Assembly (NCBI RefSeq): GCF_006345805.1
Contig: NW_021832433.1
Span: forward strand, 74,503 to 138,502
Reading direction: 5' to 3'
Length of the DNA stretch: 64,000 bases
Source of the DNA: Octopus sinensis
Taxonomy: Eukaryota
A program made the translations under genes and the position numbers. Under the pieces are notes generated by a model. That model did not search any database, was not told the DNA's origin, and worked only from the letters and a program-made list of their open reading frames with translations. This document shows, in pieces, positions 10,001-63,050 of the stretch. Position 1 is the first letter of the stretch, and each line of letters begins with the position of its first letter.

Positions 10001-11155
10001 TGCGTGCGTTTAAATAAATCCCGATGTGTGTACCAAAACTGCCAATCTAACACCATTTAAACGGGAATTACCTTAGCCGTTATCGACATCGTCTCCTGAA
10101 GAACGTAATTAGATGTGAAACGATGGGGGCTACGTGAAGACTTCAGAGAAAATAAAAGATTTCTACCACACATTTTAAAATAAAGGAATAATGTTTGTAT
10201 TACAGAGTTTATTTGTTTGCGTTTAGATAAAGAAAAAACATTTCCGCTTGCATGTGTAACCCTAGCTAAAAAAGAAAACGGTGTGCCTTTTAATTTGGAC
10301 TGTCAAAAGTCTTATGTCACCTTGATATAATGGTAATCACATCCTTATGTTTTACAAGAGAAGTAGCATTCACCTCTGTAGGTTATGTTACAGCCTTTTT
10401 GTCTTCTGTATCATATAACATGCTTTTTGAAATAAACATGCTCTGGCTGTCGCACCAGAATTCAAGTTTCAAGGCGCCGTTTGTCAATTCTTTTCTTATT
10501 CCGTAATTAATATGAAACTCGCCCCACCACCACAAAAACAAAAAACTTCTACTCAATTGAATAAGTATGTTGTGTTCTAACAATTCGCTGTGAATATCAT
10601 TTCCCAACGACATGGTTCTAGGTACAGTCCCACGGCGTCTTTCTGTGACTAAGGGCCGACCAAAGACTTGTGAGTGGAATTGGGAGATCGAAATTGAAAG
10701 AAGCCCGTCGTGTGTGTATTTCATCAAGCTGAACCGAGGAACTACTACATCACTGCTGTCTTAGCTACACTATGCTTCATCAGTTGATCGAAACGATATC
10801 TAGGGGGAACGCTTTCGATCCCAGCCCTCACGGATCGCTGTTGGGCCAGAGTTGAACAGTAAATACGACCATAATATTATGTAAAAGTAGTAAAGCGTTG
10901 ACAAGGAATCTCAATGAATTCCACGTTTCATTGAACCACTTCGATTTCCGTTTTTCTTTTATTTCTTTTACGTGTTTCAGTCATCTGACTACGGCCATGC
11001 TGGAGTACCGCCTTTAGTCGAACAACTTCGACCCCAGGACTTATTCTTTGTAAGCCTAGTACTAATTCTATCAGTCTTTTGCCGAACCGCTAAGTTACGG
11101 GGACGCAAACACACCAACTTAAATAGTCAAGCGTACAAACACACACATACACAAA

Positions 11156-11202
<47 letters not shown>

Positions 11203-11393
11203 GACGGGCTTTTTCAGTTTCTGTCTACCAAATCCAATCCCAAGGCTTTGGTCGGCCCAAGGTGCCTCGCAGTGGAACTGAACCCGGAACTATGTGGTTG
11301 TTTAGCAAGCTACTTACCACACAGCCACTCCTGCGCCTATTGAATAATATATTATCGAATGATCTACAAGTTCCACCACTGTAGTAATAATTA

Positions 11394-12708: not shown

Positions 12709-13525
12709 TTTATTGGCACAACATTCTGCTCGCGTTTACATAACATTTATATATCTTAACACGTTTTCTATCGGTTAGTCTATCGTTTATTTTACAAAAT
12801 AGCCGAATAATATTCTGCAGTGTTTTATACGTTATATGAGTAAATATTGTGTGAGTGTTCTGTGACAGTATGAAGTTTAGTAACACGTATGGACTGGAGA
12901 GTTTAAACGATATCCTACTTGTGTTAACGTATCATTTTATACGCGGAAACAGACCTACGTTATAATTGTATCATTTGTTATACCTAACGCACTATTTGAG
13001 ATTCATACAGATTTTTGTTTTTTTACATTCATAAAGAGATCACCTTTTCATACGAAACACCCTTTTGCATTTGTAAAAACATCACAAAACGTCGCTTCAG
13101 AAGTGTAAACACGTAATTTTTTATACTCTTTTACTCTTTTACTTGTGTCAGTCATTTGTAAGGCTAGTACTTATTCTATCGGTCACTTTTGCCGAACTGC
13201 TAAGTTACGGGGACGTAAACACACCAGCATCGGTTGTCAAGCGATGTTGGGGAGACAAACACAGACACACAAACATATGCACACACATACATATATATAT
13301 ATTTTACTATTTTACTTGTTTCAGTCATTTGACTGTGGCCATGCTGGAGCACCGCCTATACATATATACGACGGGCTTCTTTCAGTTTCCGTCTACCAAA
13401 TCCACTCACAAGGCTTTGGTCGGCCCGAGGCTATGGTAGAAGACACTTGCCAAAGTGGGACTGAACCCGGAACCATGTGGTTCGTAAGCAAGCTACTTAC
13501 CACACAGCCACTCCTACGCCTATTC

Positions 13526-14659: not shown

Positions 14660-14687
14660 TAATAATAATAATAATAATAATAATAAT

Positions 14688-15470
14688 GTGGAGATGGACA
14701 AGAAACAATAAATCATATTATCTCTGGCTGCCCAGTCCTGGTTAAGAAGGAATATATTCACAGACATGACAGAGTTGGAACCTACATACACTGGAAGCTA
14801 TGCCAACATTATGGAATAACAACAGAAAAAAGATGGTATAGGCACACACCAGAAAAGGTCACAGAAAACGAGAAAGCAACCATACTCTGGGATATGCCGA
14901 TACACACAGATAGAGAAATTAAGGCCAACAGACCAGATATAGTTGTCAGAGATCATGAAGAAAAAAAATGCTTTCTAATTGATGTATCAATACCAGCAGA
15001 TGACAACGTGTCTCTAAAAGAAATGGAGAAACTTTCAAAATACAAAGACCTGGAAATAGAGGTAACCAGAATGTGGAATCTAAAAACAGAAACAATTCCT
15101 ATCATAGCATTAGGCATAATAAAAAAATATTCAGACAAATACATAACAAAAACACCAGGACTTACAAACACATATAACATACAGAAAATTGCACTACTAG
15201 GCACTGTACACATCCTACGTAGAACACTTTCCATACAATAACCATCAGAGCATCACAACAAATCACAGCACATACCCAAGGCACACAGAGCTGCGTTTAC
15301 TTGATTGCATCGGTAGCATTACTTGATTCTTACATTATCTTATCGCGCCCCCATCAGAGGAATATAACAATATTAATAACAACAACAATACAATAATAAC
15401 AATATCAAACAATGGTTTAAGGTCTCTGGGAGAGACATGGAACAACTTGCATAAAAATAAAGGAATATCA
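14688..15470 (+). mobile_element. R4/Dong-like non-LTR retrotransposon 3' fragment (restriction-like endonuclease)
   Basis: ETINHIISGC..L..KEY..RHDRVG..IHWKLC, then PIHTDREIKANRPDIVVRDHEEKKCFLIDVSIP...KYKDL...QKIALLGTVHILRRTLSIQ*. PD..D endonuclease and knuckle remnant; flanked by (AAT)n. Confidence 0.85.
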
Positions 15471-16141: not shown

Positions 16142-16306
16142 TTCTTCTATAGGCGCAAAGCTTGAAATTTTGGGAGATGGCGCTAGTCGATTAGATCGAC
16201 TCCATTACGCAACTGGTAGTTAACTCATCGACCCCGAACGGATGAAAGGCAAAGTCAACCTCGGCGGAATTTGAACTCAGTACGTAAAGACAGACAAAAA
16301 ACCGCT

Positions 16307-16900
16307 AAGATACTTTTGACTGAGTGCAGTGTAATAGCACCAAAAGTGTATAAACGCAGACATGACTCTGTAGGCAAAAGAATGCATTGGGATGTTAGCC
16401 GAGTGTGTGGTTTCAAAGCAACAGGAGAGTTGTATGAACCAGAGGCTGTGATAGAAAATGAGAATTACAAGATCTTGTGGAACTTCGTCATAAAAACTGA
16501 CCGTGTTATTGAGGCAAGAAAACCAGACATGTTTATAGAACACAAAATAAAGAAAACAATGCTAAGATGAGAGGTTTTGTTATTCCCTGAGATAACAGAT
16601 TCGATAACAAGGAATTTGGAAACAATTGAGAAATATCAGGATCTAGGCAGAGAAGCGAGGAGTCTGTGGAGGACCAAGGCAACAATTCTTCCAGTAGTAA
16701 TTGGTGAACTTGGCACAACACCCTAAAAATGCTACCTAAAAGACTGGGATAGATTGGAATTGAAACTCGCGTTGTCGACTTGAAGAAAATTACCATTCTA
16801 TATTTTGCAAGAATTCTAAGCAAGATTCTTGAGATTTGAGGAGACTTGTTGTCACAAAACCCCAGGATAAAATATCTCCAAACTAAATTAGAATGCACTA
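16307..16900 (+). mobile_element. R4/Dong-like LINE 3' fragment, degenerate
   Basis: YKRRHDSVGKRMHW..ENENYKILWNFVIKTDRVIEARKPD; followed by (AAT)n at about 16905-17003. Confidence 0.8.
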
Positions 16901-23084: not shown

Positions 23085-23286
23085 CTCTTTACTCTTTTAC
23101 TTGTTTCACTCATTTGACTGTGGCCATGCTGGAGCACCGCCTTTAATCGACCAAATCGACCCCGGGACTATTCATTGTAAGACCAGTACTTATTCTATCG
23201 GTCTCTTTTTGCCGAACCGCTAAGTGACGGGGACGTAAACACTCCAACATCGGTTGTCAAGCAATGCTAGGGGGACAAACACAGAT

Positions 23287-23347
<61 letters not shown>

Positions 23348-23520
23348 CATATATACGACGGGTTTCTTTCAGTTTCCGTCTACCGAATCCACTCACAAGG
23401 CATTGGTCGGCCCGGGGCTATAGCAGAAGACATTTGCCCAAGATGCCACGCAGTGGGACTGAACCCGGAACCATGTGGTTGGTTAGCAAGCTACTTACCA
23501 CACAGCCACTCCTGCGCCTA
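23085..23520 (-). mobile_element. SINE family A, full length with internal (TA)n
   Basis: Head GGCGCAGGAGTGGCTGTGTGGTAAG..GGGTTCAGTCCC, internal microsatellite, tail ..GACTGAAACAAGTAAAAGAGTAAAAGAG. Confidence 0.9.
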
Positions 23521-25944: not shown

Positions 25945-26345
25945 ATAGGCGCAGGAGTGGCTGCGTGGTAAGTAGCTTGCTTACCATCCACATGGTTCTG
26001 GGTTCAGTCCTACTGCCTGGCACTGTGGGCAAAGTATCTTCTACTATAGCCTCGGGCCGATCAAAGCCTTGTAAGTGGATTTGGTAGACGGAAACTGAAA
26101 GAAGCCCGTCGTATATATATATATGTGTGTATGTGTATTTGTGTGTGTTTGTGTGTGTCCCCACAACATCGCTTGACAATCGATGCTGGTGTGTTTTTAT
26201 CCTCGTAACTTAGCGGTTCGGCAAAAGATACCGATAGAATAAGTACTAGGCTTACAAAAAATATGTCATGGAATCGATTTGTTCGACTAAAGGCGGTGCT
26301 CCAGCATGGCCTCAGTCAAACGACTGAAACAAGTAAAAGAATATC
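25945..26345 (+). mobile_element. SINE family A, full length
   Basis: Head, internal TA/TG run and 3' tail all present. Confidence 0.85.
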
Positions 26346-27657: not shown

Positions 27658-28439
27658 GATACACATACATACACTCCTTATATATACAATATATATATAT
27701 ATACTATATATATATATAAACATACATACATTCACTCAATATAGATACAATATATATATATACATACATACATAAATGCATACACTCAATATATATACAA
27801 TGTATATACATACATATGCATATACATACATACATACATACATACATACATACATACATACATACATACATACATACATACATACACAAAGATATGCAGA
27901 AACAATTTTTCCATCACTTTAACAGTATCATAGACAGTAATTTTCTGTTAATCTCTCTCTCTCCTTCTCTCCTTCTCACGCACTATGCTTTCTACATATG
28001 TGTGTGTGTGTGTTCATGCCTGTAATAGTAGACGTGTAAATCTAGTGCCGCAGGAAACCCGACCTGTAATACATCGACCTCTGTCACTTATGTCAGTATT
28101 GTAATATTGACAAACCTATTAAAACACAACATCTATATTAGTCTACGTGGCGACAGTTTTATTATAACGATAGCAATAATAGTGCTTTCAAATTCTGGCT
28201 CAAGGCCAGCAACACTAGGTGGTGTCGGTGGGGTGGGGGTGTTGAATTGATTACACTGACCCCCAGTGCTTAACTGGTTCTTATTTTATCGATCTCATAA
28301 AGATGAAAGGGAAAGTCAACCTTGACGGAACTTGGCGAAATAGCGTTAAGCGGTTTGACCGGCGTGTTATCAATTGTGTCACCACGCCGCCCTAACAACA
28401 ATGCATGTGCACGTGTGTGCGTTATATATATATATATAA

Positions 28440-28616
28440 GGCGAGCTGGCAGAAACGTTAGCGCGCCAGGCGAAATGCTTAGCGGTATTTCTTCTGCCGT
28501 TACCTTCTGAGTTCAAATTCCGCCGAGGTCGACTTTGCCTTTCATCCTTTCGGGGTCGATAAATAAAGTACCAGTTATGCATCTCTCCTCTATGTTTTGC
28601 CCCTTGTGGGCAATAA

Positions 28617-28620
<4 letters not shown>
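28440..28620 (+). mobile_element. SINE family B copy
   Basis: Same head and body as 3522-3751, with an internal deletion. Confidence 0.85.
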
Positions 28621-28653
<33 letters not shown>

Positions 28654-30066
28654 TATACAAATAAAGGTTACAAACCTCATTGAGAGATAGCAAAAACCTA
28701 TGAAAGTACCTATACAAAAAATGTTGAACATTGCAGTTAATACTCAACTGCAAGGCAACAATATAAACCGTGGTTTACAACTCCAGTATACACAACCTTC
28801 CTCCCCTTTCTAAGGTCTCTAACATTTTTTATACTATGTTCTTTATGCATAAATTTTATCAGTTAACAGTTTGCAGCCGTTTACTCAACATCCAGGAATT
28901 GAACAACTGTTTTGTATATCTTAAACTACCTGTGACGTGATTCGACTTACAAATGATTTTAAAATTTATTAATTAATTTTTCTGAGGCTCTTCACTTGAA
29001 ACAGCTGTAAGGGGTGTATATCAATTTTTTTTAATTAATAAATAATAATTTTTTAAATATCTCTCTATTTTCTTATCTTATGTTATATATACGTATGTAT
29101 GTATATATGTAATTGTTTTATGTGTGTATGTGTGAAAATATGTGTTTGAACTTTCCTATACGTAACTTTTCGGAAGAGGTGGTCACACTGGATAATGAGT
29201 CAAGTCAAACGTTCATAGAAACATTTATGTGTGTAACAGCGAACATGCGAAACATGCGAATAATATCCAATATTATTTCATATCTCAAGCATGTTTTCCG
29301 TTCTACCTCCCGTATTTGAGTCCAATTCAATGTTTTGTACAGCAATTACAATATGTATATATAATGCATTTAATACATTTAAAACCACATTATATATACG
29401 TAGACACACACACACACGTATAGAAGTGTATATAGAAACAACTCGTGGTGTCGTTCAACATAGCAGTGACAACGATAGGGTCTTTGTTAAATGGCGGGAT
29501 GGAGTCAGAGGCTTAAGGTCAGTTTAGACGTCGTTTGAGTGAATCATCGCATCCCACAGACAACATCTACTGCACAGTAAAGAAAGGGGTATATATGCAC
29601 ACACACACACACACACACCTGTATGTTTCCGGGTTCAGTCCTACTCCGTAGTACCTTGAGCAAGTGTCTTCTGCTGTAGCACTCGAGCCGACCAGAGCCT
29701 TGTGAGTGGATTTGGAAGACGGAAACTGAAAGAATCCCGTTACGTGTGTATGTCTGGCAGTGTGTCTGTGCTACGCTGCAGCTTGATAACCAGTGTTGCT
29801 GTGCATACGGTTGGGCAAGAGTAACTGATTCTTGTAACGGTGTTGATGTGTAGCGGTTGGGTAAGGTAAGCGATTGAACAAGTACAATGCTCGAATCAAT
29901 TCGTAAGACTAAAAAAAAATACTTCATGGCGGTGCCCCAGCATGGTCGCTGTCTAATGATTGAAACGAGGAAAAGAGTAAAAGACGTAGGCCACCGTGTA
30001 TCGTTGCAGTTCCTTGGTTTAGTGTCACGATGAAGTCTAAAACGATATTGTAGAAATATATCTCAC

Positions 30067-30229
30067 CTGGTTTAAAAATGTTTGGTTTAAAGCAAATTTT
30101 TGTTTTGTTCTTGAAGGAATTGTTGAAAGAGAATCATCATTTGGCAGGAATATGGTAAGTGGGGTGGAACCTGCTCTTGATAGTAAAGACCGAATCTCCG
30201 GGTATCTGCTAATATAACCAGCCGCGTGG
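30067..30229 (-). CDS. FAS1-domain protein, exon D (phase 2 to 0; next FAS1 repeat)
   Basis: Acceptor tatattttcAG|C, donor CAG|GTGAGA. 163 nt encoding (S)HAAGYISRYPEIRSLLSRAGSTPLTIFLPNDDSLSTIPSRTKQKFALNQTFLNQ; LTIFLPNDDS is the H1 motif. Same length and phases as exon A. Confidence 0.94.
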
Positions 30230-30325
30230 CTGAAAATATAAAAAGAAGAAATGCTTCTAAATATACATGCATAGATAAACTCAGTTACATATACAATTAC
30301 ACACACACACACACACACATTTGTA

Positions 30326-32089: not shown

Positions 32090-32237
32090 CTTAGTTTTGG
32101 CATGTCTCTTATAGCTTCCCATAACGTAAAGTTCTTATAGAACATGAAATTGGTTATCAAATGAATCACACCGTTTATACAACCTACATCTGACTGGACG
32201 ATTTTCACCCAAGTCGCGCCACCTTCAACGTAAGTAT
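32090..32237 (-). CDS. FAS1-domain protein, exon C (phase 1 to 2)
   Basis: Acceptor ttttttcAG|AT, donor CTAAG|GTAAGT. 148 nt encoding (D)TYVEGGATWVKIVQSDVGCINGVIHLITNFMFYKNFTLWEAIRDMPKL; DVGCINGVIHLI is the FAS1 H2 motif. VEGG...D....NGVIH recalls insect fasciclin-1 (from memory). Confidence 0.95.
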
Positions 32238-32244
32238 CTGAAAA

Positions 32245-32443
<199 letters not shown>

Positions 32444-32865
32444 ATGACAACATAGCAAGGATTATTAGACACATTGCAACAAGTATGGACTTGAGAGAGC
32501 AAAAAATTGGTACGAGCATAAAACCGAAGGCATCATCGACAATGATAATGCAAAGATGTATGTATGTATCTATATATGGGATTTTACGATTCAGTGCGAC
32601 CATGAGATAGAGAATAGGAAACCAGACATTGTGTTAATCGAGAAAGAAAGTAAACGATGCTGGGTCATAGATATAGCATGCTCGGCTGACAAAGTATGTG
32701 ATAAGGAAGAAAGAAAAGTCGATAGATATGACAGGTTAGCTTGGGAAGTTAAGTAGTTGTAGTCGATGAGAAAGATGGTAGTAGCACCAATAATTGTCGG
32801 AGCCCTGAGAACAGTGAGTAAAAATCTTGAGAATTACATGGAACAAATAGGGATTGCAATAAGGG
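32444..32865 (+). mobile_element. R4/Dong-like LINE 3' fragment
   Basis: HDNIAR...WYEHKPEGIIDN..WDFTIQCDHEIENRKPDIVLIEKESKRCWVIDIAC; starts directly at (AAT)n 32247-32443. Confidence 0.85.
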
Positions 32866-36540: not shown

Positions 36541-36953
36541 TAGGCGCAGGAGTGGCTGTGTGGTAAGTAGCTTGTTTACCAACCACATGGTACCGGGTTC
36601 AGTCCCACTGCGTGGCACCTTGGGCGAGTGTCTTCTACTATAGCCTCGGGCCGACCAAAGCCTTGTGAGTGGATTTGGTACACGGAAACTGAAAAGAAGC
36701 CCGTCGTATGTATGTATATATACATATCTATGCATGTGTGTGTTTGTGTGTCTGTGTTTGTCCCCCTCGCATTGCTTGACAACCGATGCTGGTGTGTTTA
36801 TGTCCCCGTTACTTAGCGGTTCGGCAAAAGAGACCGATAGAATAAGTACTGGGCTTACAAAAGAATAAGTCTCGGGGTAGAGTTGCTCGATTAAAGGCAG
36901 TGCTCCAGCATGGCCGCAGTTAAATGACTGAAACAAGTAAAAGAGTAAAAGAG
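36541..36953 (+). mobile_element. SINE family A, full length
   Basis: Same sequence as 23085-23520. Other copies at about 1150(-), 10960-11340(-), 13140-13522(-), 25945-26345(+), 29600-29985(+), 35390-35735(+), 55420-55770(+), 61680-61975(-). Confidence 0.9.
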
Positions 36954-41270: not shown

Positions 41271-41726
41271 TGGCTATAATATTTACGTACGCATGAGACA
41301 GGAATCGTTAGTGCGTCGAACAAAGTGCTTTGCACGATTTCTTCCGGCTCAATACACTTTGAGTTCACATGCTACCGAGACAAACATTCCTTTCATCCAT
41401 TCAGGGTTGATAAAATACGTACCAGTTGGACACTGGAGTCGATTTAATCGACTTAATCCTTCCTCCAAATCTGCTGACCTTTGGCCGAAATATAAACTAT
41501 CATTATTGTTTTTGTCAAGATAGCGAGCTGGCAAAATCGTTAGCATGTTGGGCGACATGCTTAGCAGTATTTTATCTGTCCGTACATTCTGGGTTCAAAT
41601 TCCGCCGAGGTCGCCTTTGCCTTTCATCTTTTCGGGGGTAAATTAAGTACCATTGGAACACAGGGGTCGATATAATCGATTCATCCCCTCTTCCAAAATG
41701 GCTTCCCCTGTGACAATATTTGAAAC

Positions 41727-41763
<37 letters not shown>

Positions 41764-41769
41764 TGCTTC

Positions 41770-43135
41770 TAACGCTGGAGATGTACTATGGTACCAGCTG
41801 TTCACTGCCAGTGAACTAACGTAACACCTCTTATTTTTCGAGCACTATCCGGAGTATTCGAGCGGTTCCAAGCAGTGCTGTTTTCTGCAAGTAGCCCCTA
41901 TTTGTTACATGTACTTTTCAAGATATTTACTTACTGTTCCCAGGGCTCCGACAATTATTGGTATTACTACCACTTTTTTCATCGCCCAAAATTGTTTAAC
42001 TTCCCAAGCTAACCTGTCATATCTATTGACTTTTCTTTCTTTTTTATCGCATACCTTGTTGTCAGCTGGATATGCTATATCTATGATCCAGCATCGTTTG
42101 TTTTCTTTCTCAATTAAGACTATGTCTGGTTACCTATTCTCTTCCTCATGGTCGCACTGAATCATTAAAATCCCATAGGATCTTTGTATTATCTTTTTCG
42201 ATGATACATTCAGATTTATGTTCGTACAACTTTTTGCTCTGTCAAGTCCATAGTTGTTGCAATGTGTCCATTGGAAAATCCTTGCTATATTGTCATGACG
42301 TGTCTTATATTCTTTCTGGGCTAGTGGCATACAATGACTGGTAATATACCATACAGTTTCACTATTCTGTCCACAAATTCTGCACTTATCACTTTCTGAT
42401 GTGCTGATTATTCTATATTTGATGTAATTGGCTCTTAATGCTTGCACTTGGGTGGCACAGATTAGAGTCTCTGTTGCCATCCATACTACCTTTTTTCTCT
42501 GTCTGTCATATGTTCGACATCCCTATGAAATTGTCCATTTTTTCTTTATCCACCTATATTCAGTTGCATTCATTCTCAAGCACTTGTACACTGCCTTATC
42601 TTTGCAATTTTCCACCCTACACAGACCTGATCCTCTTACTTCCAACTATAGTGGTTTTGTAGCATGTTTTCACACCATGCTATGTTGTTTTCTTGTGCTC
42701 TAATGCTGTTTTCGCATCCAATCAGTCCTCTTCCCCATCTTTTTTTTTTTGGTACATACTGTCTGTCTGTGTCACCTTTTGGGTGGTCTATTCCATATCT
42801 AGTCAGCAACTTTCTTGTCTTTCTGTGTAAGCTGTTTAGTCTACTGTCCATGCGATTACCCATACTCCATATCTAAGTAGTAAAAATGCCCAGGTGTTGA
42901 TAGCTTGAATCTTATTCCGTCCGTTTAATTTCGACTTAAGGATCAGTCTCAGTTTGCGCAAGTACTCCACCTTAAATATTTCTGTCTTTCTTTCTCCAAT
43001 GTCTCCATTTCCAATATCCCTAAGCACTTATAGTCCGTCTCTTCCATCTGCTTCATAAAAAAAAACTCCGACGTTATCGCTAGCCCGTCAATACATTTGA
43101 TTTTGCCTCTCTTCAAGACTAACACACCAAATTAT
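41770..43135 (-). mobile_element. R4/Dong-like LINE, longer 3' fragment (RT C-terminus, zinc knuckle, endonuclease), frameshifted
   Basis: KLRLILKSKLNGRNKIQAINTW; RKTRKLLT..GIDHPKGDTDR; ETLICATQVQALRANYIKYRI..DKCRICGQ..ETVWYITSHC..KEYKTRHDN; QKTALLGTARILR. Bounded by (TTA)n at both ends. Confidence 0.88.
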
Positions 43136-43995: not shown

Positions 43996-44426
43996 GGAAC
44001 GAGATTCCAATAGCTCATGTACGCTAACAGACATCAGCACGCAATTTCGTACCACAGCGTGCGATAGAACACTTGAATGGATAAAGAACATTGAAATAAT
44101 GAATGAGAAACTGTTCCATCAAAATTGATGTTTAATCTCATTTTTACGCAATGCACCTGTGTGTGTGTGAGTGTGTGTGTGTGCGTGTGTGTGTGTCTGT
44201 GTGTGTGTGTGTGTGTGTGTATATTCTTATATTTGTTTCAGTCATTTGACTGCGGGCATGCTCAAGTATCGCCTTTAGTCGAACAAATCGACCCCAGGAC
44301 TTATCTTTTTGTAAGCCTAGTACTTATTCTATCGCTCTTTTTTGCCGAACCGCTAAGTTACGGGAACGTAAACACCCCAACATCGGTTGTCAAGCGATGT
44401 TGAGGGGACAAAAACATACACACTAA

Positions 44427-44490
<64 letters not shown>

Positions 44491-44697
44491 ATATGTATAT
44501 ATATATTTAAGTAGGTGAATGAATTATACTTGTATGGAAAATTCGGTTAACCGATACCTGGGTACCAAATTCACGTCAGAAATCACGGTGGAAGCTACAT
44601 ATCAAGGGTAGAAACACCGTGTTCTTGTGTGTAAAGTTGTGTGTATTTTTTATATGAATAAATGAAAGAATGGAGTCGAAGGAATTTTTTAACAAAA

Positions 44698-44796
44698 TTC
44701 CTTTACTCTCGACACATGTTTCGAAGACTCCATACTCTTAATTCCGAAGGAATAAATAGTGCATTATGCCGTCTTCTCTTCAGGAAAGACAAGGAA
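44698..44796 (-). ncRNA. Type I hammerhead ribozyme with intact core, Penelope-like-element/retrozyme style
   Basis: Minus strand: UUCCUUGUCUUUC-CUGAAGA-GAAGAC[42-nt loop]GUCUUC-GAAAC-AUGU-GUC|GAGAGUAAAGGAA. All core nucleotides present; stem II 6 bp; stem I 11 of 13 pairs with a 2x2 internal loop; stem III minimal with palindrome ACAUGU. Predicted cleavage between 44711 and 44710. Confidence 0.8.
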
Positions 44797-44989
44797 CCTC
44801 TATCAGTCTCAAGACGAACAAAAACTTTTTGATGACTGCCTACATTGATAAGTCCTGGGGTCGATTTGTTCGACTAAAGGCGATACTTGAGCATGCTCGC
44901 AGTCAAATGACTGAAACAAATATAAGAATACACACACACAATGTAGGCAGTCATCAAAAAGTTTCTGTTCGTCTTGAGACTGATAGAGG

Positions 44990-45087
44990 TTCCTTGTCTT
45001 TCCTGAAGAGAAGACGGCATAATGCACCCTTTATTCCTTCGGAATTAAGAGTATGCAGTCTTCGAACATGTGTCGAGAGTAAAGGAA
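44990..45087 (+). ncRNA. Second hammerhead copy (inverted), core GAAAC read as GAAC, predicted inactive
   Basis: Near-identical inverted copy of 44698-44796, lacking one A of GAAAC (45064-45067). This could be a real deletion or an assembly indel. Confidence 0.6.
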
Positions 45088-45121
45088 TTTTGTTAAAATA
45101 TTCGTTCGACTCCATTCTTTC

Positions 45122-45171
<50 letters not shown>

Positions 45172-46104
45172 TACACATACATATATATGACAGTCTCCAT
45201 TTACCAGATCCACTCACAAGGCTTCGGTCAGCCCGAGTTTATAGTAGAAGACACCTGCCCAAGGTGTCACGCAGTTGGACTGAACCCGGAGCCATGTGGT
45301 TGGGAAGCAAGCTACTTAACACACAGAGACGCCTATATATACATGCACTCATGGCTGACTGGCGCGGTACCTTGTGTGTATGAAAATCAGTGTATATAAA
45401 ATATGAAGATGAAAAATCGCATGAGGTTCAACGAGAGTAGAGTAGGTTGAGGCCGGCAGAGGCTGGACGTCAGACGCTTTTCGCTTCGTTCACAATGTGC
45501 TTTTTTTTTCAGTAAGAAAACACGATAGCATTGGTAAAGAAATTGGAATGGAATTGGCAAAATCTATCATCGTGATTGTAGCAGAGGAATTTGGTAAAAC
45601 GAACCAATCCTTAGAACAAGAAACATTTCCCCAGATGCAGGAAAAGATATTTATGAGAGTATAGATGGTGTGGTTGCTCATTTGGTGAGATGTCTATATG
45701 AATAACAGATGGAAATAATATATTAACATATTGTGCATCGATTGCCTTAACATACATCGAACGTACTTCAATAAAGCGGAAATCGTAAGGCGGCGAGCTG
45801 GGAGAAACGTTAGCACGCTGGGCGAAATGCTTAGCAGTGTTTCGTCTGTTTTTATGTTCTGAGTTCAAATTCTGCCGAGGTCAACTTTGCCTTTTATCTC
45901 TAATTGAATGCCCCCCCCACACCTCTTCAAAAATTTCAGGCCTTGTGCCTAGAGTAGAAAATAATAAACCGGAAATTACCTTAAAAGGACCAAAGCCATT
46001 TTTTTTTCAAAGCGCAGTTCAAGTCGAATGAGGTCGAAATTATGATGTCTAGTTGACATGTTCATAAAACGAATATACTGAAGTGGAAATTTATATGAAA
46101 TATA

Positions 46105-46903: not shown

Positions 46904-47756
46904 ACGGTTACGTATGTCATGTGTGGGGGTGTGTATTTTAGTAATCACCTCCAAATAGTCACCCAAATAAGTTTCATGGCGAAAGGCAGTCAGCTCTGTC
47001 ATTCCAGTTTTTTTAGACATCGTGTCCCTAACACTACACTACCGACTGGGTCGTTTTCCTTGGACAGCATTGTGACCTGAAAAAGGGTTACTATCTGTGA
47101 TTGCAAGATGGAACACTCAGTGTCATACATACCCACGATGCCAATGTGCCGTGTATTTGAATGTATTTTGGTTAGTATCCATTTGTAGTTATGTTTTGTT
47201 AATTCATTTTAACGACAATTTATTTCCATCACTAAGCAGACTACACATAACTGATGAGTTCACAAAAGAGGCGAACGCCTCCGCGCCTTCCTATTTAATG
47301 TTAACAAAAACAAGATTTTCACAATGAAAGTGGAAATTGCTTTTACTTGAAGTTGCTTCATAATTTCTTAAAGTTATCGCAGCCTTACTTGGTGATTGGC
47401 TATCGATTCTACTTAGCTTTCTCTTTTATTTTTCTGACTAAAGGGCGAATTTTACAGAAAAATGTCTTTGTTTCTTGGAATACGTCATTCAGTGCAACAG
47501 CTTCTCAATGAACTGCATTCAAGTATAACCTTGGGGCGAACAAACCCGTCTGAGAAAAATCAGGTAGGTTGAAAATATGCGATAGCTTATCGGGGACACC
47601 CCCCCCCCCCAACACATCGTTAAATCCGTGTATGTACACACACATACAGACATGTGAATATATGTGTGTGTGTGTATGCATATATATATACACAAATACA
47701 CACATATGCATGTGTGTGTCTTTGTATACATGTATACATACATACATACATACATG

Positions 47757-49779: not shown

Positions 49780-50005
49780 CTATATGATTCAAAATGTGAC
49801 CGCTTGTGTACCGTTGGCGATTTTTTTCCTCCGTCTTACTTCCTCGGATCTTTCCTTTTCCTATGTTTCTGATGAAGAGCTCCGCTCGAAACATTAAGTC
49901 CTCCTTCTTTCTTTCCTTTGCTGAGCGTCCAATAACACTATACTTGTTCCATGTCCTCGCGTTGTTGTGTTTTCTCTTTGTCTTTTCATATTTGGATTAA
50001 CTATA
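49780..50005 (+). mobile_element. Repeat end with minimal hammerhead core (probable Penelope-like terminus)
   Basis: CTGATGA-A-GAGC-TCC-GCTC-GAAAC at 49869-49892; stem I not recoverable. The 3' part (49940-50003) recurs inverted at about 7572-7640. Both abut (TA)n. Confidence 0.5.
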
Positions 50006-51159: not shown

Positions 51160-51385
51160 ATACCTATTTCTTTATTATCCACAATGGGCTAAACATAGAG
51201 GGGACAAACAAGGACAGACAAACGGATTAAGTCGATTATATCGACCCTAGTGCGTAACTGGTACTTATTTAATCGACCCCGAAAGGATGAAAGGCAAAGT
51301 CGACCTCGGCAGAATTTGAACTCAGAACGTAGCGGCAGACGAAATACCGCAAAGCATTTCGCCCGGCGTACTAACGTTTCGCCGA
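51160..51385 (-). mobile_element. SINE family B, near-intact copy
   Basis: Reverse complement closely matches 3522-3751; a partial second copy lies at about 51075-51160. Confidence 0.85.
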
Positions 51386-51977
51386 TTCTCTCAGAAAATT
51401 ACATTAAGCGTACCCATATTTGTGGCATATTTTTACGTGAATTCAAGGGCAGATAATTCAATTGATCGATCAACCGAATCCTCGTCCTCTAGGACGGATA
51501 TCCACAACCATCACCAAATATATAATGAACATGTTCTACAATGTGAGCCCAGATAACCAAAGACTAACGATTGTGCACTTTGAAGATCTTTTAACATAGG
51601 CTAGCTTAGAGATAATGAAGGGCAGTGGTTATCAGTTGGGGGTACTTGTGAACTTTAGCGGTCCATATGATTCTCCTTGTGGGTCCATAAAAGATTTTGC
51701 TGCTAAAATTTATAATTTTATTTACTAAATTTTATTACTTATACATGCTTCTAGAAAATACAAAATATTTTAACATTTTTTTATGAGTTTCCTAATAATA
51801 TTTAATTATAAAAATATGATTCCTTTAAACATCGAATGGCAACGAGTAAAACAGGAATTAAAGATGTCCATTGGTTAAAGATTGTTGAGAGCAAGTGATC
51901 TTCAGTCATGGCCGAAACTTTGGATTATCGGTCTAAAAAATGAGAATTTGCGTATTAAATAGCCCCGAATATATTGT

Positions 51978-52508
51978 TGGCATCCTTTTTGTCTCGGGAG
52001 ACAATGGAGTTGCATAAAATAATCTAGTCCGGCCTTTACATTTCATGTCCTAATACATCTCCTGCTGTGGCTGTGTAGTCCTATCATGGACAAACACTCA
52101 CCCTGGCAGGTGCCGCAAGTGTAGCAAAGACTGTTCCTGGCTGGTTGTAATGTCATAGTTTCTTGTTGACGTCTTTTGTCTTTCCATTTCTCCTCTCTCC
52201 CTCTGTCACTCCATTGTGTTCCCTCTTTTACGGTACGTCGCCAATCTCCACGGTTGCTGGCGACTGCTTCCCAGTCGCTAATATTGATGTTGCAGGCCTT
52301 CATGTCCCTTTTGCAAACATCCGTGTATCGTAAGAACGGTCTTTCCCACAGACCTAGTGCCCCTAGCAAGCTCTCCGTTGAGTATGTCCTTGGGATACTA
52401 CAATCTTTCATATGGCTATCATGTCCAAGCCATCTCATCTTTGGCATCAAATGGTAGAATCATGTCCCCAACAAAGATGTCCTCAAGCAAGCAGGAAACC
52501 AAGCACGT
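51978..52508 (-). mobile_element. 5'-truncated RTE-like LINE with target-site duplication
   Basis: RWLGH.SHMKDCSIP....RPFLRYTDVCKRDMKACNINISDWEAVASNRGDWRRTVKEG...CGTCQGECLSMIGLHSHSRRC*. Direct repeat TAGCCCCGAATATAT at 51960 and 52509. Confidence 0.85.
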
Positions 52509-55347: not shown

Positions 55348-55889
55348 GTATGTATGTATGTATTTATATATATATATATATACACGTGTTTGTGTGTGTG
55401 TGTAAAATGCGCGCGCAGGTGTAGGTATGTGGTGATAATTTTGCTTTCCAGCCACATGGCTCTGTGTTCAGTCCTACTCTGTAGCACCTTAGACAGGTGT
55501 CTTCTGCTACAGCTTCGGACCGACCAAAGCGTTGTGAGCTGATCTGGTACACGGAAGCTGGAAAAAGCCCGTCGTACACATGTATATGTGTGTGTGCGCG
55601 CGCACATTTCGAATAGTGGGCGAGGGTGGGGCAAACGCAAACGCGTATCCCTTTAGCGGTTCGGGAAAAGGGCTGATAGAATAAATTTAAGACTCAAAAA
55701 GGAAGTCCTGGGACCGATTTGCTCGACAGAGCCCATGGAGGAAGTGATCCAGCATGGCTGCAGTCTAAGTAAAAGACGAAATATAATATGTAGATGTGTA
55801 TTGCTGTTTTTTCGAATAGTTACGAATTTCGCTTCGTCCACATGAATTCTGGTTTCGCGGGACATCTTGGGCAAATGTTATTTTCTATA

Positions 55890-56480: not shown

Positions 56481-56583
56481 TTCTAGAGTTAGCCTTCACT
56501 CTTCAGAGCGTGGATTTGGAGTGAAATGTGACAGCACGATACATGATGATAATGAGAAAAAATATGGAAAATATTGTAGGTAC

Positions 56584-56704
56584 CTTCGCCATTTTTAAAC
56601 CCCAGAGCTCTTATAGTTGAATTTTTTAAATTGTAATGTACTCTTTCACCTCGCAGGTTTTCTGGGCTCCATTCAACGTCCGGAATGATATGACGAGATA
56701 ATAT
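56584..56704 (-). CDS. FAS1-domain protein, exon B (phase 0 to 1)
   Basis: Acceptor tatttccAG|ATA, donor GAAG|GTACCT (weak). 121 nt encoding ILSRHIIPDVEWSPENLRGERVHYNLKNSTIRALGFKNGE, with the FAS1 central H-I/V-I/V motif. In frame with exons A and C. Confidence 0.9.
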
Positions 56705-56991
56705 CTGGAAATAATTTAACAGAGAATTATAGAGTATTAACAAGTGTTTTAATTACGGGTATATATGTCATTGTATATGCATACAATGAAAATGAAATCG
56801 TCAAATGAAAGGAATAGATGACTTAACATTTCGGAGAGTTTTCGCAGAGAAGTTAAAGCAATAAGAGAAGCAAGATAAAAAGAAATAGGAAATAATTTTG
56901 ATTTCATGACATCTGTTTACATTGCTAACTTGGTATGTATATATACGCGCACGTGCACGTGACCGTGTGTGTGTGTGTAATAATTCATTAC

Positions 56992-57154
56992 CTCTGTCAG
57001 CAGTGTCCAATTGTTTTTAAGCATACTTTGTTGTTTCAGCGGCAATCGGGAAAGTGCTTCGTCAGTGGGAACAAAAACTGTCATCGTACGTTTTGGATTC
57101 CTTAACATACTGCGGTAAGGTTTCAGCATGTGATTAAATAGTTGAGCCACTGAC
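56992..57154 (-). CDS. Fasciclin (FAS1)-domain cell-adhesion protein, internal exon A (phase 2 to 0)
   Basis: Acceptor ttttctcAG|G at 57156-57155, donor GAG|GTAATG at 56991. 163 nt encoding SVAQLFNHMLKPYRSMLRNPKRTMTVFVPTDEALSRLPLKQQSMLKNNWTLLTE; TMTVFVPTDEA is the FAS1 H1 motif. Confidence 0.93.
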
Positions 57155-57725: not shown

Positions 57726-57744
57726 CTTGCCTTTAAGAGTATCG

Positions 57745-58520
57745 CAAAATGCATGATAGAGCAGCACAGTATATTCATTGGGTAATTTGCAAAGGCTTGG
57801 ACCTGCCCCACGACAAAAACTGGTGGGAATACAAACCACCTCCAGTGCTTGAAAACGACCACATCTCACTCCTTGAAACTTCACCGTTCAAACTGACAGA
57901 AAGAGAAATGCCAGACATTATATAGAAGGATTTCAGAAAAATATCATGCCTCCTCATCGATATGACTGTTATAATCGATATAAATGTATCTGTCAAGATC
58001 TACCAAAAACTGGGCAAGTATAAAGAACTTGAAATAGAAATTGGCAAAAAGAGAAACCTCAAGACTAAAACAAAACCTATTATCATAGTTGCCATAGGAT
58101 TGATAGCAAAATGGCTGATTGCTCAGATATCAAGAAATCAAAAAATGGAAGAAATTCGAAAAATAGTGCTCATGGGAACTGCTTATATCCCAGGTAAAAT
58201 ACTGTCTATGTAATCCACGAAACATTTTAATCTGTAAACTGTGTTAAAAGTACTTTTAAATTTACATAATAGCAAACACCTTTCACTGTCATCTTAACAT
58301 CACACTGCCATCTCATAATCAATTTTTTTTTTTTATAACAAACGTTTAGTTTACTTATGTTTTGAAACACATTCACCGGAACAATACTCTTTGCAAAAGC
58401 AAATATATGGCACCCTAGGCATAACACTGACTTGAACTTCTAACTTGTCTCTTGATGTCTCTGGGTGAAACTCAGAGTTAACTTGTAGAAACACAAAGCA
58501 AAAGCCAAACATATAGTAAT
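57745..58520 (+). mobile_element. R4/Dong-like LINE 3' fragment with 3' UTR
   Basis: HDRAAQYIHWVICK..WWEYKPPPVLEND; LLIDMTV..DINVSVKIYQKLGKYKELEIEI..KIVLMGTAYI..KILSM*. Confidence 0.8.
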
Positions 58521-58740
58521 ATAATAATGGTTTCAAATTTTTCCATAAGGGCAGCAGTTTTGGGGGTGGGGATGAGTTGATTACATCGATCACAATTTAC
58601 CACTGGTATTTATTTTATCGATCCCAAAAGGATAAAAGGCAAAGTCGACCTCGACACAATATGAACTCACAAGGTGAAGACGGTCGAAATGCCACTAAAA
58701 ATTTTGCCCAGCGTGCTAACGATTCTGCCTGCTCACTGCC

Positions 58741-58796
<56 letters not shown>

Positions 58797-61656: not shown

Positions 61657-61784
61657 CACAATACACACACACGTGTTACTTAACAAACCAACATCGGCTG
61701 TCAAGCGATGCTGGCTAGACTAACGCAGACACACATATACATACATAATACATACATACATAACATACATACATACATACTACA

Positions 61785-61840
<56 letters not shown>

Positions 61841-63050
61841 CACACACGACCGGCAGCTTTGGATTTCGTCTGAGCTTTAGTAGAAGACATCTGCCCAAGG
61901 TGCCACGCAGTGGGACTGAACCCAGAACCATGCGTTTGGGAAGCAAGCTTCTTCCCACACAGCCACTCCTGCTGTATATCTCTTATTATAATGTAAATCT
62001 TTCTGTTTTATCTTTGTTTGTAACCGCCTCTAGCTCTATCTGCCGATTATTTTGATCCATCTCTACGTCGATGTGTGCATAGGTATGTCTGTAACTCTTC
62101 ATACATTTCTCATTCAGGACATAAGTGTACATATGTGTTTGTGCGTGTGTGTCGGGATACCTGTGTGCGTGTACCTATCAATCACTCTGTCTCATTACCT
62201 ATCAATCAATTGCTCTATCGAAACTTCTCTGCATCTGCACGTGTCTGGGGAAACGTGCATAGATTCACGGATGTACATATCGATGATACACTTTTCTTAC
62301 TGGTGTATAATACAAGCAACAGCGTGTATATAGATGCATACACACACACACTCACATACACACCCACACACATAGACACTCGCAGTACTGTTTGATTTCC
62401 AACGTTGACGCCATCTTACGGGAGATTTAGGAAGCAAAAAAAAAAAAAAGAAACGGTCTAGTTTTCGTTCTTTTATGTTTTATTTATTTAGATAATTTCC
62501 ATCTCTTTATTTAAATTCTTTAGTTATTTATAGCATTTAGTATTCTACCCTGTCTTCCGGCTAATTTCCAAATCGTTTTTCACTGTCTTTATATATTTTT
62601 TTTAATGGTGATATATAGACTCAGGTCACTTTCTATGCATGGAAGTTATTTCATTGTCCATAGCGGTAAGCCCTATCAAACACCATAGATTGACAGGTAC
62701 GTCACTTATACACACACAATATATATATATTATATATATGTATGGACTGACACACATATACATGCACATGTATTTTTATATCCGTTGTTTATATACCATG
62801 TTTTTAATTCATGTATTGTTTTAAAGTCATAAAAATATGCATGCGTGTATGAGATTATGTGTGCTGTGTGCGAAGACCCAGCTCTTTGTCTCTGGTGACT
62901 ATAAAGTAGCGACATACAATAATTGCGTGAAATATCAACCGAAACTTAGTTTGCGATCGAAACATTTATGGATGTGTGTCTATTTTTACACATGCATTTG
63001 TATGACTATAAATTTGAACATATATTTATGTAGGTATATATATATATATA

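What the first reader, a model, noticed from the sequence alone, without database searches (positions are those of the whole stretch)
44698..44796. Apparently intact hammerhead ribozyme in the 24-kb intron, sense to the host pre-mRNA
Seen in sequence: the minus strand gives the complete core (CUGAAGA, G10.1-C11.1, GAAAC, GUC cleavage triplet), a 6-bp stem II with a long loop, an 11/13-bp stem I with an internal loop, and a 2-bp stem III with palindrome ACAUGU. Established: type I hammerheads with minimal palindromic stem III occur in Penelope-like elements and retrozymes and often cleave as dimers. Inference: it could cut the fasciclin pre-mRNA mid-intron, or act as a retrozyme-like RNA.
Basis: partly seen in the sequence, partly recalled or inferred. 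Interest (0 to 1): 0.78.

Follow-up and report, generated by a model that had tools for sequence, protein, structure and literature searches.

The report
Masked hammerhead ribozyme relic in intron
A complete-looking self-cutting RNA motif (type I hammerhead) does sit mid-intron in the sense strand of a fasciclin-domain gene, but it belongs to a short inserted repeat that is present as two inverted copies, so in the gene's transcript it should be locked into a long double-stranded hairpin and is most likely an inert leftover of a mobile element.

Summary
The minus strand of 44796-44698 carries a full type I hammerhead: CUGAAGA, G10.1-C11.1, GAAA, a 2-bp helix III with a tetraloop, GUC with cleavage at 44711/44710, a 6-bp helix II and an 11/13 helix I. 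It is the only such motif in the window. Chance expectation is about 0.01 per window for a loose descriptor. Rfam's type I model aligns end to end but scores below its threshold (19.1 vs 34 bits) because of a 50-nt insertion in helix II.

The gene context also holds. Three minus-strand exons splice into a Fasciclin domain, and the motif lies mid-way in a 24,346-nt intron, in sense.

The motif lies in a 197-nt unit with an inverted twin 91 nt away (95% identical). The twin's core has lost one A (GAAC). The 611-bp block sits inside the (TA)n of a SINE-like repeat.

In the host transcript the antisense twin is made first. The predicted fold is a ~195-bp duplex (-341 kcal/mol), and the hammerhead fold is ~130 kcal/mol worse.

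No tandem copy, reverse-transcriptase reading frame or further copy was found. The most likely reading is a decaying solo copy of a hammerhead-bearing retroelement, not a regulator of the gene.

The parts
44698..44796 (-). Intact type I hammerhead motif. Helix I strands 44796-44784 and 44710-44698; CUGAAGA 44783-44777; helix II 44776-44771 and 44728-44723, with a 42-nt imperfect hairpin extension at 44770-44729; GAAA 44722-44719; helix III hairpin 44719-44712; C17 at 44711; predicted scissile bond 44711/44710.
   Evidence: Sequence; descriptor scan; Rfam RF00163 alignment at 19.1 bits; folds.
44651..44847 (-). Unit X, left copy (197 nt, GC 0.36), which carries the intact hammerhead. The 60 nt downstream of the cleavage site contain a 10-bp hairpin (AAGGAAUUUU/AAAAUUCCUU) and the stretch GACUCCAU. 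These compete with helices I and II.
   Evidence: Inverted-repeat detection; alignment of the two copies; folding.
44848..44938 (+). Spacer between the two arms. It is an inverted, 98% identical copy of the terminal segment (44212-44305) of the surrounding SINE-like repeat, including part of its (TG)n end.
   Evidence: It is 98% identical to the local copy, against 84-86% to the other copies of that repeat in the window.
44939..45134 (+). Unit X, right copy (196 nt), inverted relative to the left copy, with 9 differences in 197. Its hammerhead copy (44990-45087, + strand) reads GAAC at 45064-45067 instead of GAAAC, so the core is broken.
44511..44650 (.). 140 nt of single-copy sequence between the (TA)n and the 3' end of the left unit. 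It is part of the 611-bp block that is absent from other copies of the SINE-like repeat. Its origin is unknown.
   Evidence: BLAST and nhmmer found no other copy in the window.
44212..44510 (+). One half of the SINE-like repeat that hosts the insertion (44212-44428), followed by its central (TA)n (44429-44510).
   Evidence: Matches 23090-23355, 26344-26112, 36944-36707 and 10960-11201.
45122..45335 (+). (TA)n (45122-45189) and the other half of the same SINE-like repeat copy (45190-45335).
   Evidence: Matches 23370-23513, 36691-36548 and 26097-25953. In those copies the two halves are separated only by the microsatellite.
56584..57154 (-). Upstream exons of the host gene: 57154-56992 and 56704-56584. 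The donor of the 24.3-kb intron is at 56583.
32090..32237 (-). Downstream exon of the host gene. The acceptor of the 24.3-kb intron is at 32238.

Best explanation
The motif is a genuine descendant of a type I hammerhead ribozyme. It is carried by a ~197-nt, AT-rich, non-coding unit (X). X arrived as part of a 611-bp insertion in the (TA)n microsatellite of a SINE-like repeat, inside a 24.3-kb intron of a fasciclin-domain gene.

The insertion holds two head-to-head inverted copies of X, separated by a 91-nt inverted duplicate of the neighbouring repeat's own end. This is the kind of arrangement left by Penelope-like or retrozyme-type retroelements. The two copies have since drifted apart by about 4.6%. 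One lost an A of the GAAA core. The other, the one reported, still has every core base.

How it works now (inferred). Transcribed on its own as a ~100-150-nt RNA, the intact copy should fold as a hammerhead and could self-cleave after C17 (44711). In the host pre-mRNA, the complementary arm is transcribed about 290 nt earlier. The two arms should therefore zip into a ~195-bp duplex as the second arm emerges, so the ribozyme rarely or never forms. The realistic consequence of the locus for the host RNA is a long intronic dsRNA hairpin, a plausible substrate for RNA editing or RNAi, and not a ribozyme cut.

Shown: the motif, its rarity by chance, the twin and its core deletion, the nesting, the gene model and strand, and the thermodynamic predictions. 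Inferred: the retroelement origin, the masking in vivo and the absence of function.
For: - Motif and statistics.
- Inverted twin at 95.4% identity with GAAC in place of GAAAC.
- Differences are spread evenly (4 inside the 99-nt hammerhead, 5 in the other 98 nt) and are not compensatory, as expected for neutral drift.
- The 611-bp block is an insertion relative to other copies of the SINE-like repeat, whose halves are separated only by (TA)n.
- The spacer is a local duplicate (98% to the adjacent copy, 84-86% to others).
- Penelope-like elements are described as inserting preferentially into microsatellites such as (TA)n. They form inverted structures with 5'-truncated copies and carry hammerheads near their ends (PMC8557442).
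- The canonical metazoan type I hammerhead has a helix III of 1-2 bp capped by a 2-4-nt loop (PMC4209133).
- A 2-bp helix III plus tetraloop is called typical of invertebrate hammerheads, and retrozyme units are 170-400 nt with low GC (PMC7229834). X is 197 nt with GC 0.36.
- Monomeric, dispersed, frequently intronic copies are common where such elements exist (bioRxiv 10.64898/2026.07.22.740005).
- Masking: the 501-nt sense transcript folds into the long hairpin at -341.5 kcal/mol, z = -38.6. The hammerhead-enforced fold is 127-134 kcal/mol worse at all transcript lengths.
- Within X alone the hammerhead fold is 10.2 kcal/mol worse than the minimum-energy fold, and the pair probabilities of helices I and II are about 0.
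Against: - No other copy of X was found anywhere, so membership of a repeat family is not demonstrated. Nothing turned up in the other 63 kb of the window, in viral, metagenome or prokaryote-genome DNA scans, in protein space, or in paper texts. None of the collections on hand appears to hold this organism; even the fasciclin exons found nothing.
- No reverse-transcriptase or GIY-YIG reading frame is visible near the element. Only a few ORFs were run against Pfam.
- The 42-nt extension of helix II is unusual, and the Rfam score is below threshold.
- The folding arguments are equilibrium thermodynamics. Helicases, RNA-binding proteins or editing could change the outcome in vivo.
- The origin of the spacer and of the 140-nt segment 44511-44650 is unexplained.
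- The core difference between the copies is a homopolymer-length difference (AAA vs AA), which could be a sequencing error in one copy.
Confidence: 0.6

Rival explanations
1. One reading: an active intronic ribozyme. It cleaves the fasciclin pre-mRNA co-transcriptionally and so tunes splicing or elongation, as proposed for other intronic self-cleaving ribozymes.
For: The core is intact, helices I and II are good, and the motif is sense to the gene and mid-intron. The isolated 99-nt RNA and a transcript starting at the 5' end of X keep the hammerhead in the minimum-energy fold until about 28 nt past its 3' end. There is a precedent that an intronic ribozyme can affect its host gene: the Cpeb3 ribozyme (PMC10919898 abstract).
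Against: The complementary arm is transcribed first, and the duplex is favoured by about 130 kcal/mol at every length. An alternative fold inside X wins by about 10 kcal/mol. The motif sits in a young insertion inside a repeat inside a microsatellite, and its twin is already broken with evenly spread differences, so there is no sign of selection. No conservation data are available.
Confidence: 0.07
2. It is a unit of an active non-LTR retrozyme. The RNA between two hammerheads would be excised, circularised and reverse-transcribed.
For: It is a type I hammerhead with a 2-bp helix III plus tetraloop, in a 197-nt, low-GC unit (PMC7229834).
Against: There is no tandem direct repeat. The only second copy is inverted and lacks a core base, so one transcript carries at most one working site and no monomer can be released. 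The 8-nt helix III register would allow dimers, but only between two separate RNA molecules.
Confidence: 0.04
3. The motif is a chance hammerhead look-alike inside unrelated inserted DNA. For example, the arms could be the long terminal inverted repeats of a foldback or MITE-like DNA transposon that landed in a TA-rich target.
For: The structure is a 484-bp palindrome with 197-bp arms flanked by TA repeats. No family membership or covariation could be shown. The Rfam score is below threshold and, rescaled to a Gb-sized genome, would not be significant on its own. The thermodynamic z-score is unremarkable.
Against: A motif with all the canonical features seen here is expected about 3e-7 times per window and about 0.005 times per Gb (analytic estimate, backed). 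The central spacer is a local duplicate of the neighbouring repeat, which a transposon arriving from elsewhere would not carry. No other copy of the supposed transposon exists in 64 kb that is rich in other repeats.
Confidence: 0.12
4. The inverted duplication is an assembly artefact (a fold-back chimera). The real locus would hold one copy of X, so the hammerhead is not masked by a twin.
For: Palindromic junctions and homopolymer-length differences (AAA vs AA) are typical long-read artefacts. The spacer is a near-exact inverted copy of sequence only 540 bp away.
Against: The arms differ by 8 substitutions as well as the indel. That is not expected for a chimera built from the same molecule. 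Even as a single copy, X prefers a non-hammerhead fold by about 10 kcal/mol.
Confidence: 0.1

Closest known systems
Canonical metazoan type I hammerheads of non-LTR retrozymes (Cervera & de la Pena, NAR 2020, PMC7229834)
   Same: Type I topology, a full conserved core and the GUC site. Helix III is 2 bp capped by a tetraloop. Helix I has an internal loop about 5 bp from the core. The carrier unit is AT-rich and about 200 nt, within the 170-400-nt range.
   Different: There is no tandem array; the only other copy is inverted and broken. Helix II is 6 bp plus a 42-nt imperfect hairpin, where the usual form is about 4 bp plus a small loop. The loop-loop contacts cannot be recognised. No copies elsewhere and no circular RNA have been shown.
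Hammerheads in the pseudo-LTRs of Penelope-like elements (Cervera & de la Pena 2014, PMC4209133; Craig et al. 2021, PMC8557442)
   Same: Insertion into a (TA)n microsatellite. A head-to-head inverted arrangement of copies, as described for 5'-truncated PLE insertions. The hammerhead lies near the 3' end of the unit, and helix III is short.
   Different: No RT/GIY-YIG reading frame and no direct pseudo-LTR pair at this locus. The motif is not the 'min-HHR' type: it has no bulged base at the 5' side of helix II, helix I is longer, and a real helix III is present.
Conserved intronic hammerheads of amniotes, Rfam HH9 (RF02275) and HH10 (RF02277). The original description by de la Pena & Garcia-Robles 2010 is cited from my own knowledge.
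   Same: A type I hammerhead lying in sense within a long intron of a protein-coding gene.
   Different: There was no Rfam match to those families. The motif sits inside a recent repeat insertion with a decaying twin, not a conserved single-copy element. Conservation could not be tested.
CPEB3 intronic HDV-like ribozyme (PMC10919898)
   Same: An intronic self-cleaving ribozyme, sense to its host gene, whose cleavage competes with splicing.
   Different: It belongs to a different ribozyme class and is conserved and experimentally active. Here no activity or conservation is shown, and an upstream complementary arm is predicted to prevent folding.

Membership tests
Hammerhead ribozyme, type I (Rfam RF00163) | Conserved catalytic core: C3 U4 G5 A6 N7 G8 A9, G12 A13 A14, the A15.1-U16.1 pair, and H17 not G | tested here: met
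   CUGAAGA, GAAA, A15.1-U16.1 and C17 read from the sequence. All core columns match in the Rfam alignment.
Hammerhead ribozyme, type I (Rfam RF00163) | Three helices around the core, with helix I open (both RNA ends in helix I) | tested here: met
   Descriptor hit with helices I/II/III of 5(+6)/6/2 bp. The minimum-energy and centroid folds of the 99-nt RNA contain helices I and II.
Hammerhead ribozyme, type I (Rfam RF00163) | Score at or above the family's curated gathering threshold (34 bits) | tested here: not met
   19.1 bits and E 0.017 in a 116-nt search, with a 50-nt insertion in helix II. No hit in the whole-window gathering search.
Hammerhead ribozyme, type I (Rfam RF00163) | Canonical metazoan helix sizes: helix I about 6 bp with loop 1, helix II about 4 bp with loop 2, helix III 1-2 bp with a 2-4-nt loop (PMC4209133) | tested here: inconclusive
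   Helix III fits (2 bp + 4 nt). Helix I fits roughly (5 bp, internal loop, 6 bp). Helix II does not fit (6 bp + a 42-nt extension).
Hammerhead ribozyme, type I (Rfam RF00163) | Tertiary contacts between loop 1 and loop 2, and self-cleavage | not testable with these tools
   This needs 3D modelling or an in vitro cleavage assay.
Metazoan non-LTR retrozyme | Short (170-400 nt), low-GC unit carrying a type I hammerhead | tested here: met
   X is 197 nt with GC 0.36 (PMC7229834).
Metazoan non-LTR retrozyme | Tandem direct repeats, so that two hammerheads flank a monomer | tested here: not met
   Only an inverted copy exists. BLAST, the repeat finder and nhmmer find no direct copy in the window.
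Metazoan non-LTR retrozyme | Multi-copy family in the genome, expressed as circular RNA | not testable with these tools
   The source genome and transcriptome are not available. All external searches returned nothing.
Penelope-like element (pseudo-LTR hammerhead) | Hammerhead inside direct pseudo-LTRs that flank an RT plus GIY-YIG reading frame | tested here: not met
   The insertion is 611 bp with no long ORF. No RT-like ORF lies nearby in the six-frame lists. The few ORFs scanned with Pfam gave no RT.
Penelope-like element (pseudo-LTR hammerhead) | 'min-HHR' architecture: helix II 7-8 bp with a bulged 5' base, helix I 4-5 bp, and no or vestigial helix III (PMC4209133) | tested here: not met
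   No bulge, helix I 11/13, and a helix III of 2 bp + tetraloop.
Penelope-like element (pseudo-LTR hammerhead) | Insertion into a microsatellite, with an adjacent inverted 5'-truncated copy (PMC8557442) | tested here: met
   The block is flanked by (TA)n on both sides, and the two X copies are joined head-to-head. This is a resemblance, not proof of the mechanism.
Conserved intronic hammerheads HH9/HH10 (RF02275, RF02277) | Match to the family model, and conservation at the orthologous intron | tested here: not met
   No match to either model at any threshold used. Orthologous loci could not be obtained.

The most novel reading that the evidence does not exclude
X is the first sighted member of an undescribed family of hammerhead-bearing short retroelements in this invertebrate genome. 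The genome may be a cephalopod's, but that is only a recollection of mine about the SINE-like repeat and was not tested. The family's ribozyme would have an unusually expanded helix II (6 bp plus a 42-nt imperfect hairpin), which makes it invisible to Rfam at curated thresholds. A bolder version is that the intact copy is conditionally active, being released when the inverted-repeat duplex is unwound or edited.
Probability: 0.25. Interest if true: 0.4.

Novelty: new member of a known kind. Interest (0 to 1): 0.25.

Why it matters
Hammerheads tied to retroelements are already known by the thousand in invertebrate genomes, including many in introns, so one more relic changes little.

Two points have modest value. 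First, the motif shows that a type I hammerhead with a long helix II insertion escapes Rfam's curated threshold, so such variants are probably under-counted. Second, it is a clear example of why an intact-looking ribozyme cannot be read as active without its transcript context. Here an inverted twin turns the locus into a long intronic dsRNA, which is more likely to matter to the host (through editing or RNAi) than any cleavage.

Tried and rejected
- **Rfam, whole window and 900-nt region:** nothing for any hammerhead family. Only a 116-nt search showed the sub-threshold type I match.
- **Searches for other copies of X:**
  - A concatenated six-frame peptide query across the arm, against the 5.8-billion-protein collection: 0 hits.
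  - Exact and gapped DNA patterns against viral contigs, metagenome contigs and prokaryote genomes: 0 hits.
  - Sequence strings in paper full texts and one supplement: 0 hits.
  - BLAST with word size 7 and nhmmer --max within the window: only the twin.
- **Identifying the organism or orthologous loci through the fasciclin exons:** 0 hits, so the orthologous-intron route was closed.
- **Is X a diverged body of the SINE-like repeat?** Rejected. The alignment shows homology only over the 94-nt terminal segment.
- **A candidate middle exon at 36288-36040:** rejected, because it has no acceptor in phase. The real one is 56704-56584.
- **ARAGORN:** no tRNA-like part in the repeats, so I leave the orientation of the SINE-like repeat open.
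- **Hits at 47248-47370 with the loosest descriptor (3/3/2):** at the chance level of 0.08 per window, so dismissed.
- **A covariance model built from the two copies:** considered and not done. Two near-identical sequences add nothing beyond BLAST and nhmmer.

Full report
**Observation**

On the minus strand, 44796-44698 reads UUCCUUGUCUUUC-CUGAAGA-GAAGAC-(42 nt)-GUCUUC-GAAA-C-AUGU-G-U-C/GAGAGUAAAGGAA. Every invariant hammerhead position is present: C3-A9, G10.1-C11.1, G12-A14, A15.1-U16.1 and C17.
- Helix II is 6 bp.
- Helix III is 2 bp closed by a tetraloop.
- Helix I is 5 bp, a 2x2 internal loop, then 6 bp, which gives 11/13.
- The scissile bond would be 44711/44710.

One refinement concerns dimers. 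The register a dimeric hammerhead needs is the 8-nt ACAUGUGU, which pairs with itself through two central U-G wobbles, rather than the hexamer palindrome ACAUGU.

**More than chance?**

- A descriptor I wrote (helix I >=4, II >=4, III >=2 contiguous pairs, loops up to 60 and 40 nt) finds this site and no other on either strand.
- It hits 0.007 times per dinucleotide-shuffled window across 300 shuffles, and never at 5/5/2.
- In 55.7 Mb of Markov sequence the rate was 0.0115 per 64 kb at 4/4/2, 0.0011 at 5/5, and 0 at 5/6.
- An analytic estimate from base composition requires the further canonical features that are present (G-C at 10.1/11.1, 6-bp helix II, short helix III loop, 11/13 helix I). 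It gives about 3e-7 per window, or about 0.005 per Gb. This is my calculation and assumes independent positions.
- Rfam did not report any hammerhead at gathering thresholds, nor at E<=10 in a 900-nt search.
- In a 116-nt search, the type I model RF00163 aligned over its full length. It scored 19.1 bits against a gathering score of 34, with E = 0.017; the deficit comes from a 50-nt insertion in helix II. Rescaled to a Gb-sized genome, that score alone would not be significant.
- The 99-nt RNA folds into helices I and II (-23.8 kcal/mol), but no better than shuffles (z = -1.1).

**Gene context**

Minus-strand exons lie at 57154-56992, 56704-56584 and 32237-32090. All have AG/GT boundaries and compatible phases. 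Spliced together they encode an almost complete Pfam Fasciclin domain: 64.9 bits, E 1e-17, profile positions 16-119 of 123. The first exon alone scores 32.9 bits.

The intron between 56583 and 32238 is 24,346 nt. The hammerhead lies in sense, 11.9 kb from the donor and 12.5 kb from the acceptor.

The motif lies in a 197-nt unit, X (44847-44651, minus strand). X has an inverted twin at 44939-45134 on the plus strand, 95.4% identical, with only 91 nt between the arms.
- The twin's hammerhead (44990-45087) reads GAAC where the reported copy reads GAAAC. It therefore lacks one A of the G12-A15.1 run and cannot form the core.
- The nine differences between the copies are spread evenly: four in the 99-nt motif and five in the other 98 nt. 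None is compensatory. This is the pattern of neutral drift after duplication.

The 91-nt spacer (44848-44938) is an inverted copy of 44212-44305, the terminal segment of the SINE-like repeat in which the whole structure is nested.
- It is 98% identical to that neighbouring copy, including part of its (TG)n end.
- Other copies of the repeat in the window are only 84-86% identical.
- It is therefore a local duplicate.

That SINE-like repeat occurs at least eight times in the window. In the other copies its two halves are separated only by a (TA)n tract; for example, 23090-23505 is contiguous. Here the halves (44212-44428 and 45190-45335) are separated by (TA)n, a 611-bp block (44511-45121), and (TA)n again. 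The block consists of 140 nt of single-copy sequence, X inverted, the spacer, and X.

No other copy of X or of the 140-nt segment exists in the window.

**Behaviour in RNA (predictions only)**

In the host pre-mRNA the order of synthesis is antisense twin, then spacer, then the intact hammerhead.
- The 501-nt sense transcript folds into a near-perfect ~195-bp hairpin: -341.5 kcal/mol, z = -38.6.
- For transcripts ending anywhere from the 3' end of the hammerhead onwards, the best fold that contains the hammerhead is 127-134 kcal/mol worse than the minimum-energy fold. The minimum-energy fold contains none of the helix I or helix II pairs.
- The competing arm is upstream and adjacent to the loop, so it can zip up as the second arm emerges. 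No kinetic window is apparent.
- Without the twin, a transcript starting at the 5' end of X keeps the hammerhead in the minimum-energy fold only until about 28 nt past its 3' end. After that, a 10-bp hairpin (AAGGAAUUUU/AAAAUUCCUU) and the pairing AUGGAGUC/GACUCCAU take over by 9-10 kcal/mol. The pair probabilities of helices I and II fall to about 0.

**What it is**

The literature describes canonical metazoan type I hammerheads with a helix I of ~6 bp, a helix II of ~4 bp, and a helix III of 1-2 bp capped by a 2-4-nt loop (PMC4209133).
- A 2-bp helix III plus tetraloop is called typical of invertebrate motifs.
- Their carriers are 170-400-nt, low-GC tandem units called retrozymes (PMC7229834).
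- A 2026 preprint derives animal retrozymes from the pseudo-LTRs of Penelope-like elements. It reports that monomeric copies are dispersed and that about 43% of copies overlap introns in Xenopus.
- Penelope-like elements insert preferentially into microsatellites, including (TA)n. They often leave an inverted 5'-truncated copy head-to-head with the main copy, and they carry the hammerhead near their ends (PMC8557442).

The locus fits that picture in unit size, composition (GC 0.36), helix III, target site and head-to-head arrangement. It fails the membership tests:
- There is no tandem direct repeat, so it is not a retrozyme array.
- There is no RT/GIY-YIG reading frame or pseudo-LTR pair, so it is not a Penelope-like element proper.
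- It does not have the 'min-HHR' architecture.
- It has no match to the HH9/HH10 intronic families.

I therefore file it as a solo, rearranged, decaying copy of a hammerhead-bearing retroelement. Its family could not be identified because none of the collections on hand holds this organism. The arm peptides, the fasciclin exons and the DNA patterns all returned nothing.

**Rivals**

- An active regulator of the host pre-mRNA is not excluded, but it is disfavoured by the masking, by the alternative fold, and by the lack of any sign of selection.
- A chance motif in a foldback-type DNA element is made unlikely by the chance estimate and by the locally derived spacer.
- An assembly artefact for the palindrome is possible. 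It is weakened by the eight substitutions between the arms.

**Verdict**

The functional interpretation is not supported for this locus. This is an ordinary kind of object, a retroelement-type hammerhead relic, with two instructive twists: a long helix II insertion that defeats Rfam's threshold, and an inverted twin that should silence it. No step had to be referred.

Noticed in passing
window 49869-49905 (+): A second hammerhead-like core: CUGAUGA-A-GAGC-UCC-GCUC-GAAAC-AUUAA-GUC. It has a 4-bp helix II, an unpaired A at the 5' side of helix II (a trait described for Penelope-type minimal hammerheads), and a 2-bp helix III plus GUC. The flanks are both pyrimidine-rich and form no helix I, and it is not part of a repeat in the window. 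It is either a decayed motif or chance.
   Followed up: partly
window 44212-44428 + 45190-45335; also 23090-23505, 25953-26344, 36548-36947, 10960-11332, 13155-13516, 55417-55786, 61682-61970, 1147-1367: An abundant SINE-like interspersed repeat of about 400 bp with a central (TA)n or mixed microsatellite. There are at least eight copies in 64 kb, 67-89% identical to each other. From memory it resembles a repeat of octopus genomes; that is a lead only and was not tested. ARAGORN finds no tRNA-like part.
   Followed up: partly
window 28382-28774 (-), 45614-45880 (-), 51199-51453 (+), 16220-16567 (+), 58520-58741 (+), 41572-41805 (-): Another dispersed repeat family, recognisable because its translations share the string RPRKDERQSRPRRNLNSE...RRNTAKHFA.RANVS. 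One copy lies only about 300 bp from the hammerhead-bearing SINE copy.
   Followed up: no
window 14687-15238 (+), 16220-16567 (+), 42130-42480 (-), 57737-58210 (+), 52046-52459 (-): Open reading frames that look like C-terminal fragments of non-LTR retrotransposon proteins, with shared motifs such as C..CG....T..H....C and KPD(I/M). Pfam gave no match at E<=0.01 for those tested.
   Followed up: partly
window 56584-56704 (-): A 121-nt exon just 287 nt downstream of the first fasciclin exon. Without it the two obvious exons are out of frame. With it the three exons give a near-complete Fasciclin domain. A further Fasciclin-like exon lies at about 30037-30318 (-).
   Followed up: yes
window 32240-32500 (-) and many other sites: Very long trinucleotide (ATT/TAA)n and dinucleotide (TA)n, (TG)n tracts. 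One runs right up to the acceptor of the 24-kb intron, where it supplies the polypyrimidine tract. Microsatellites make up a large share of the window.
   Followed up: no
window 44511-44650: 140 nt of single-copy sequence inside the inserted block, containing the small palindromes CGGTTAACCG and GGTACC. It matches nothing in the window and its origin is unexplained.
   Followed up: partly
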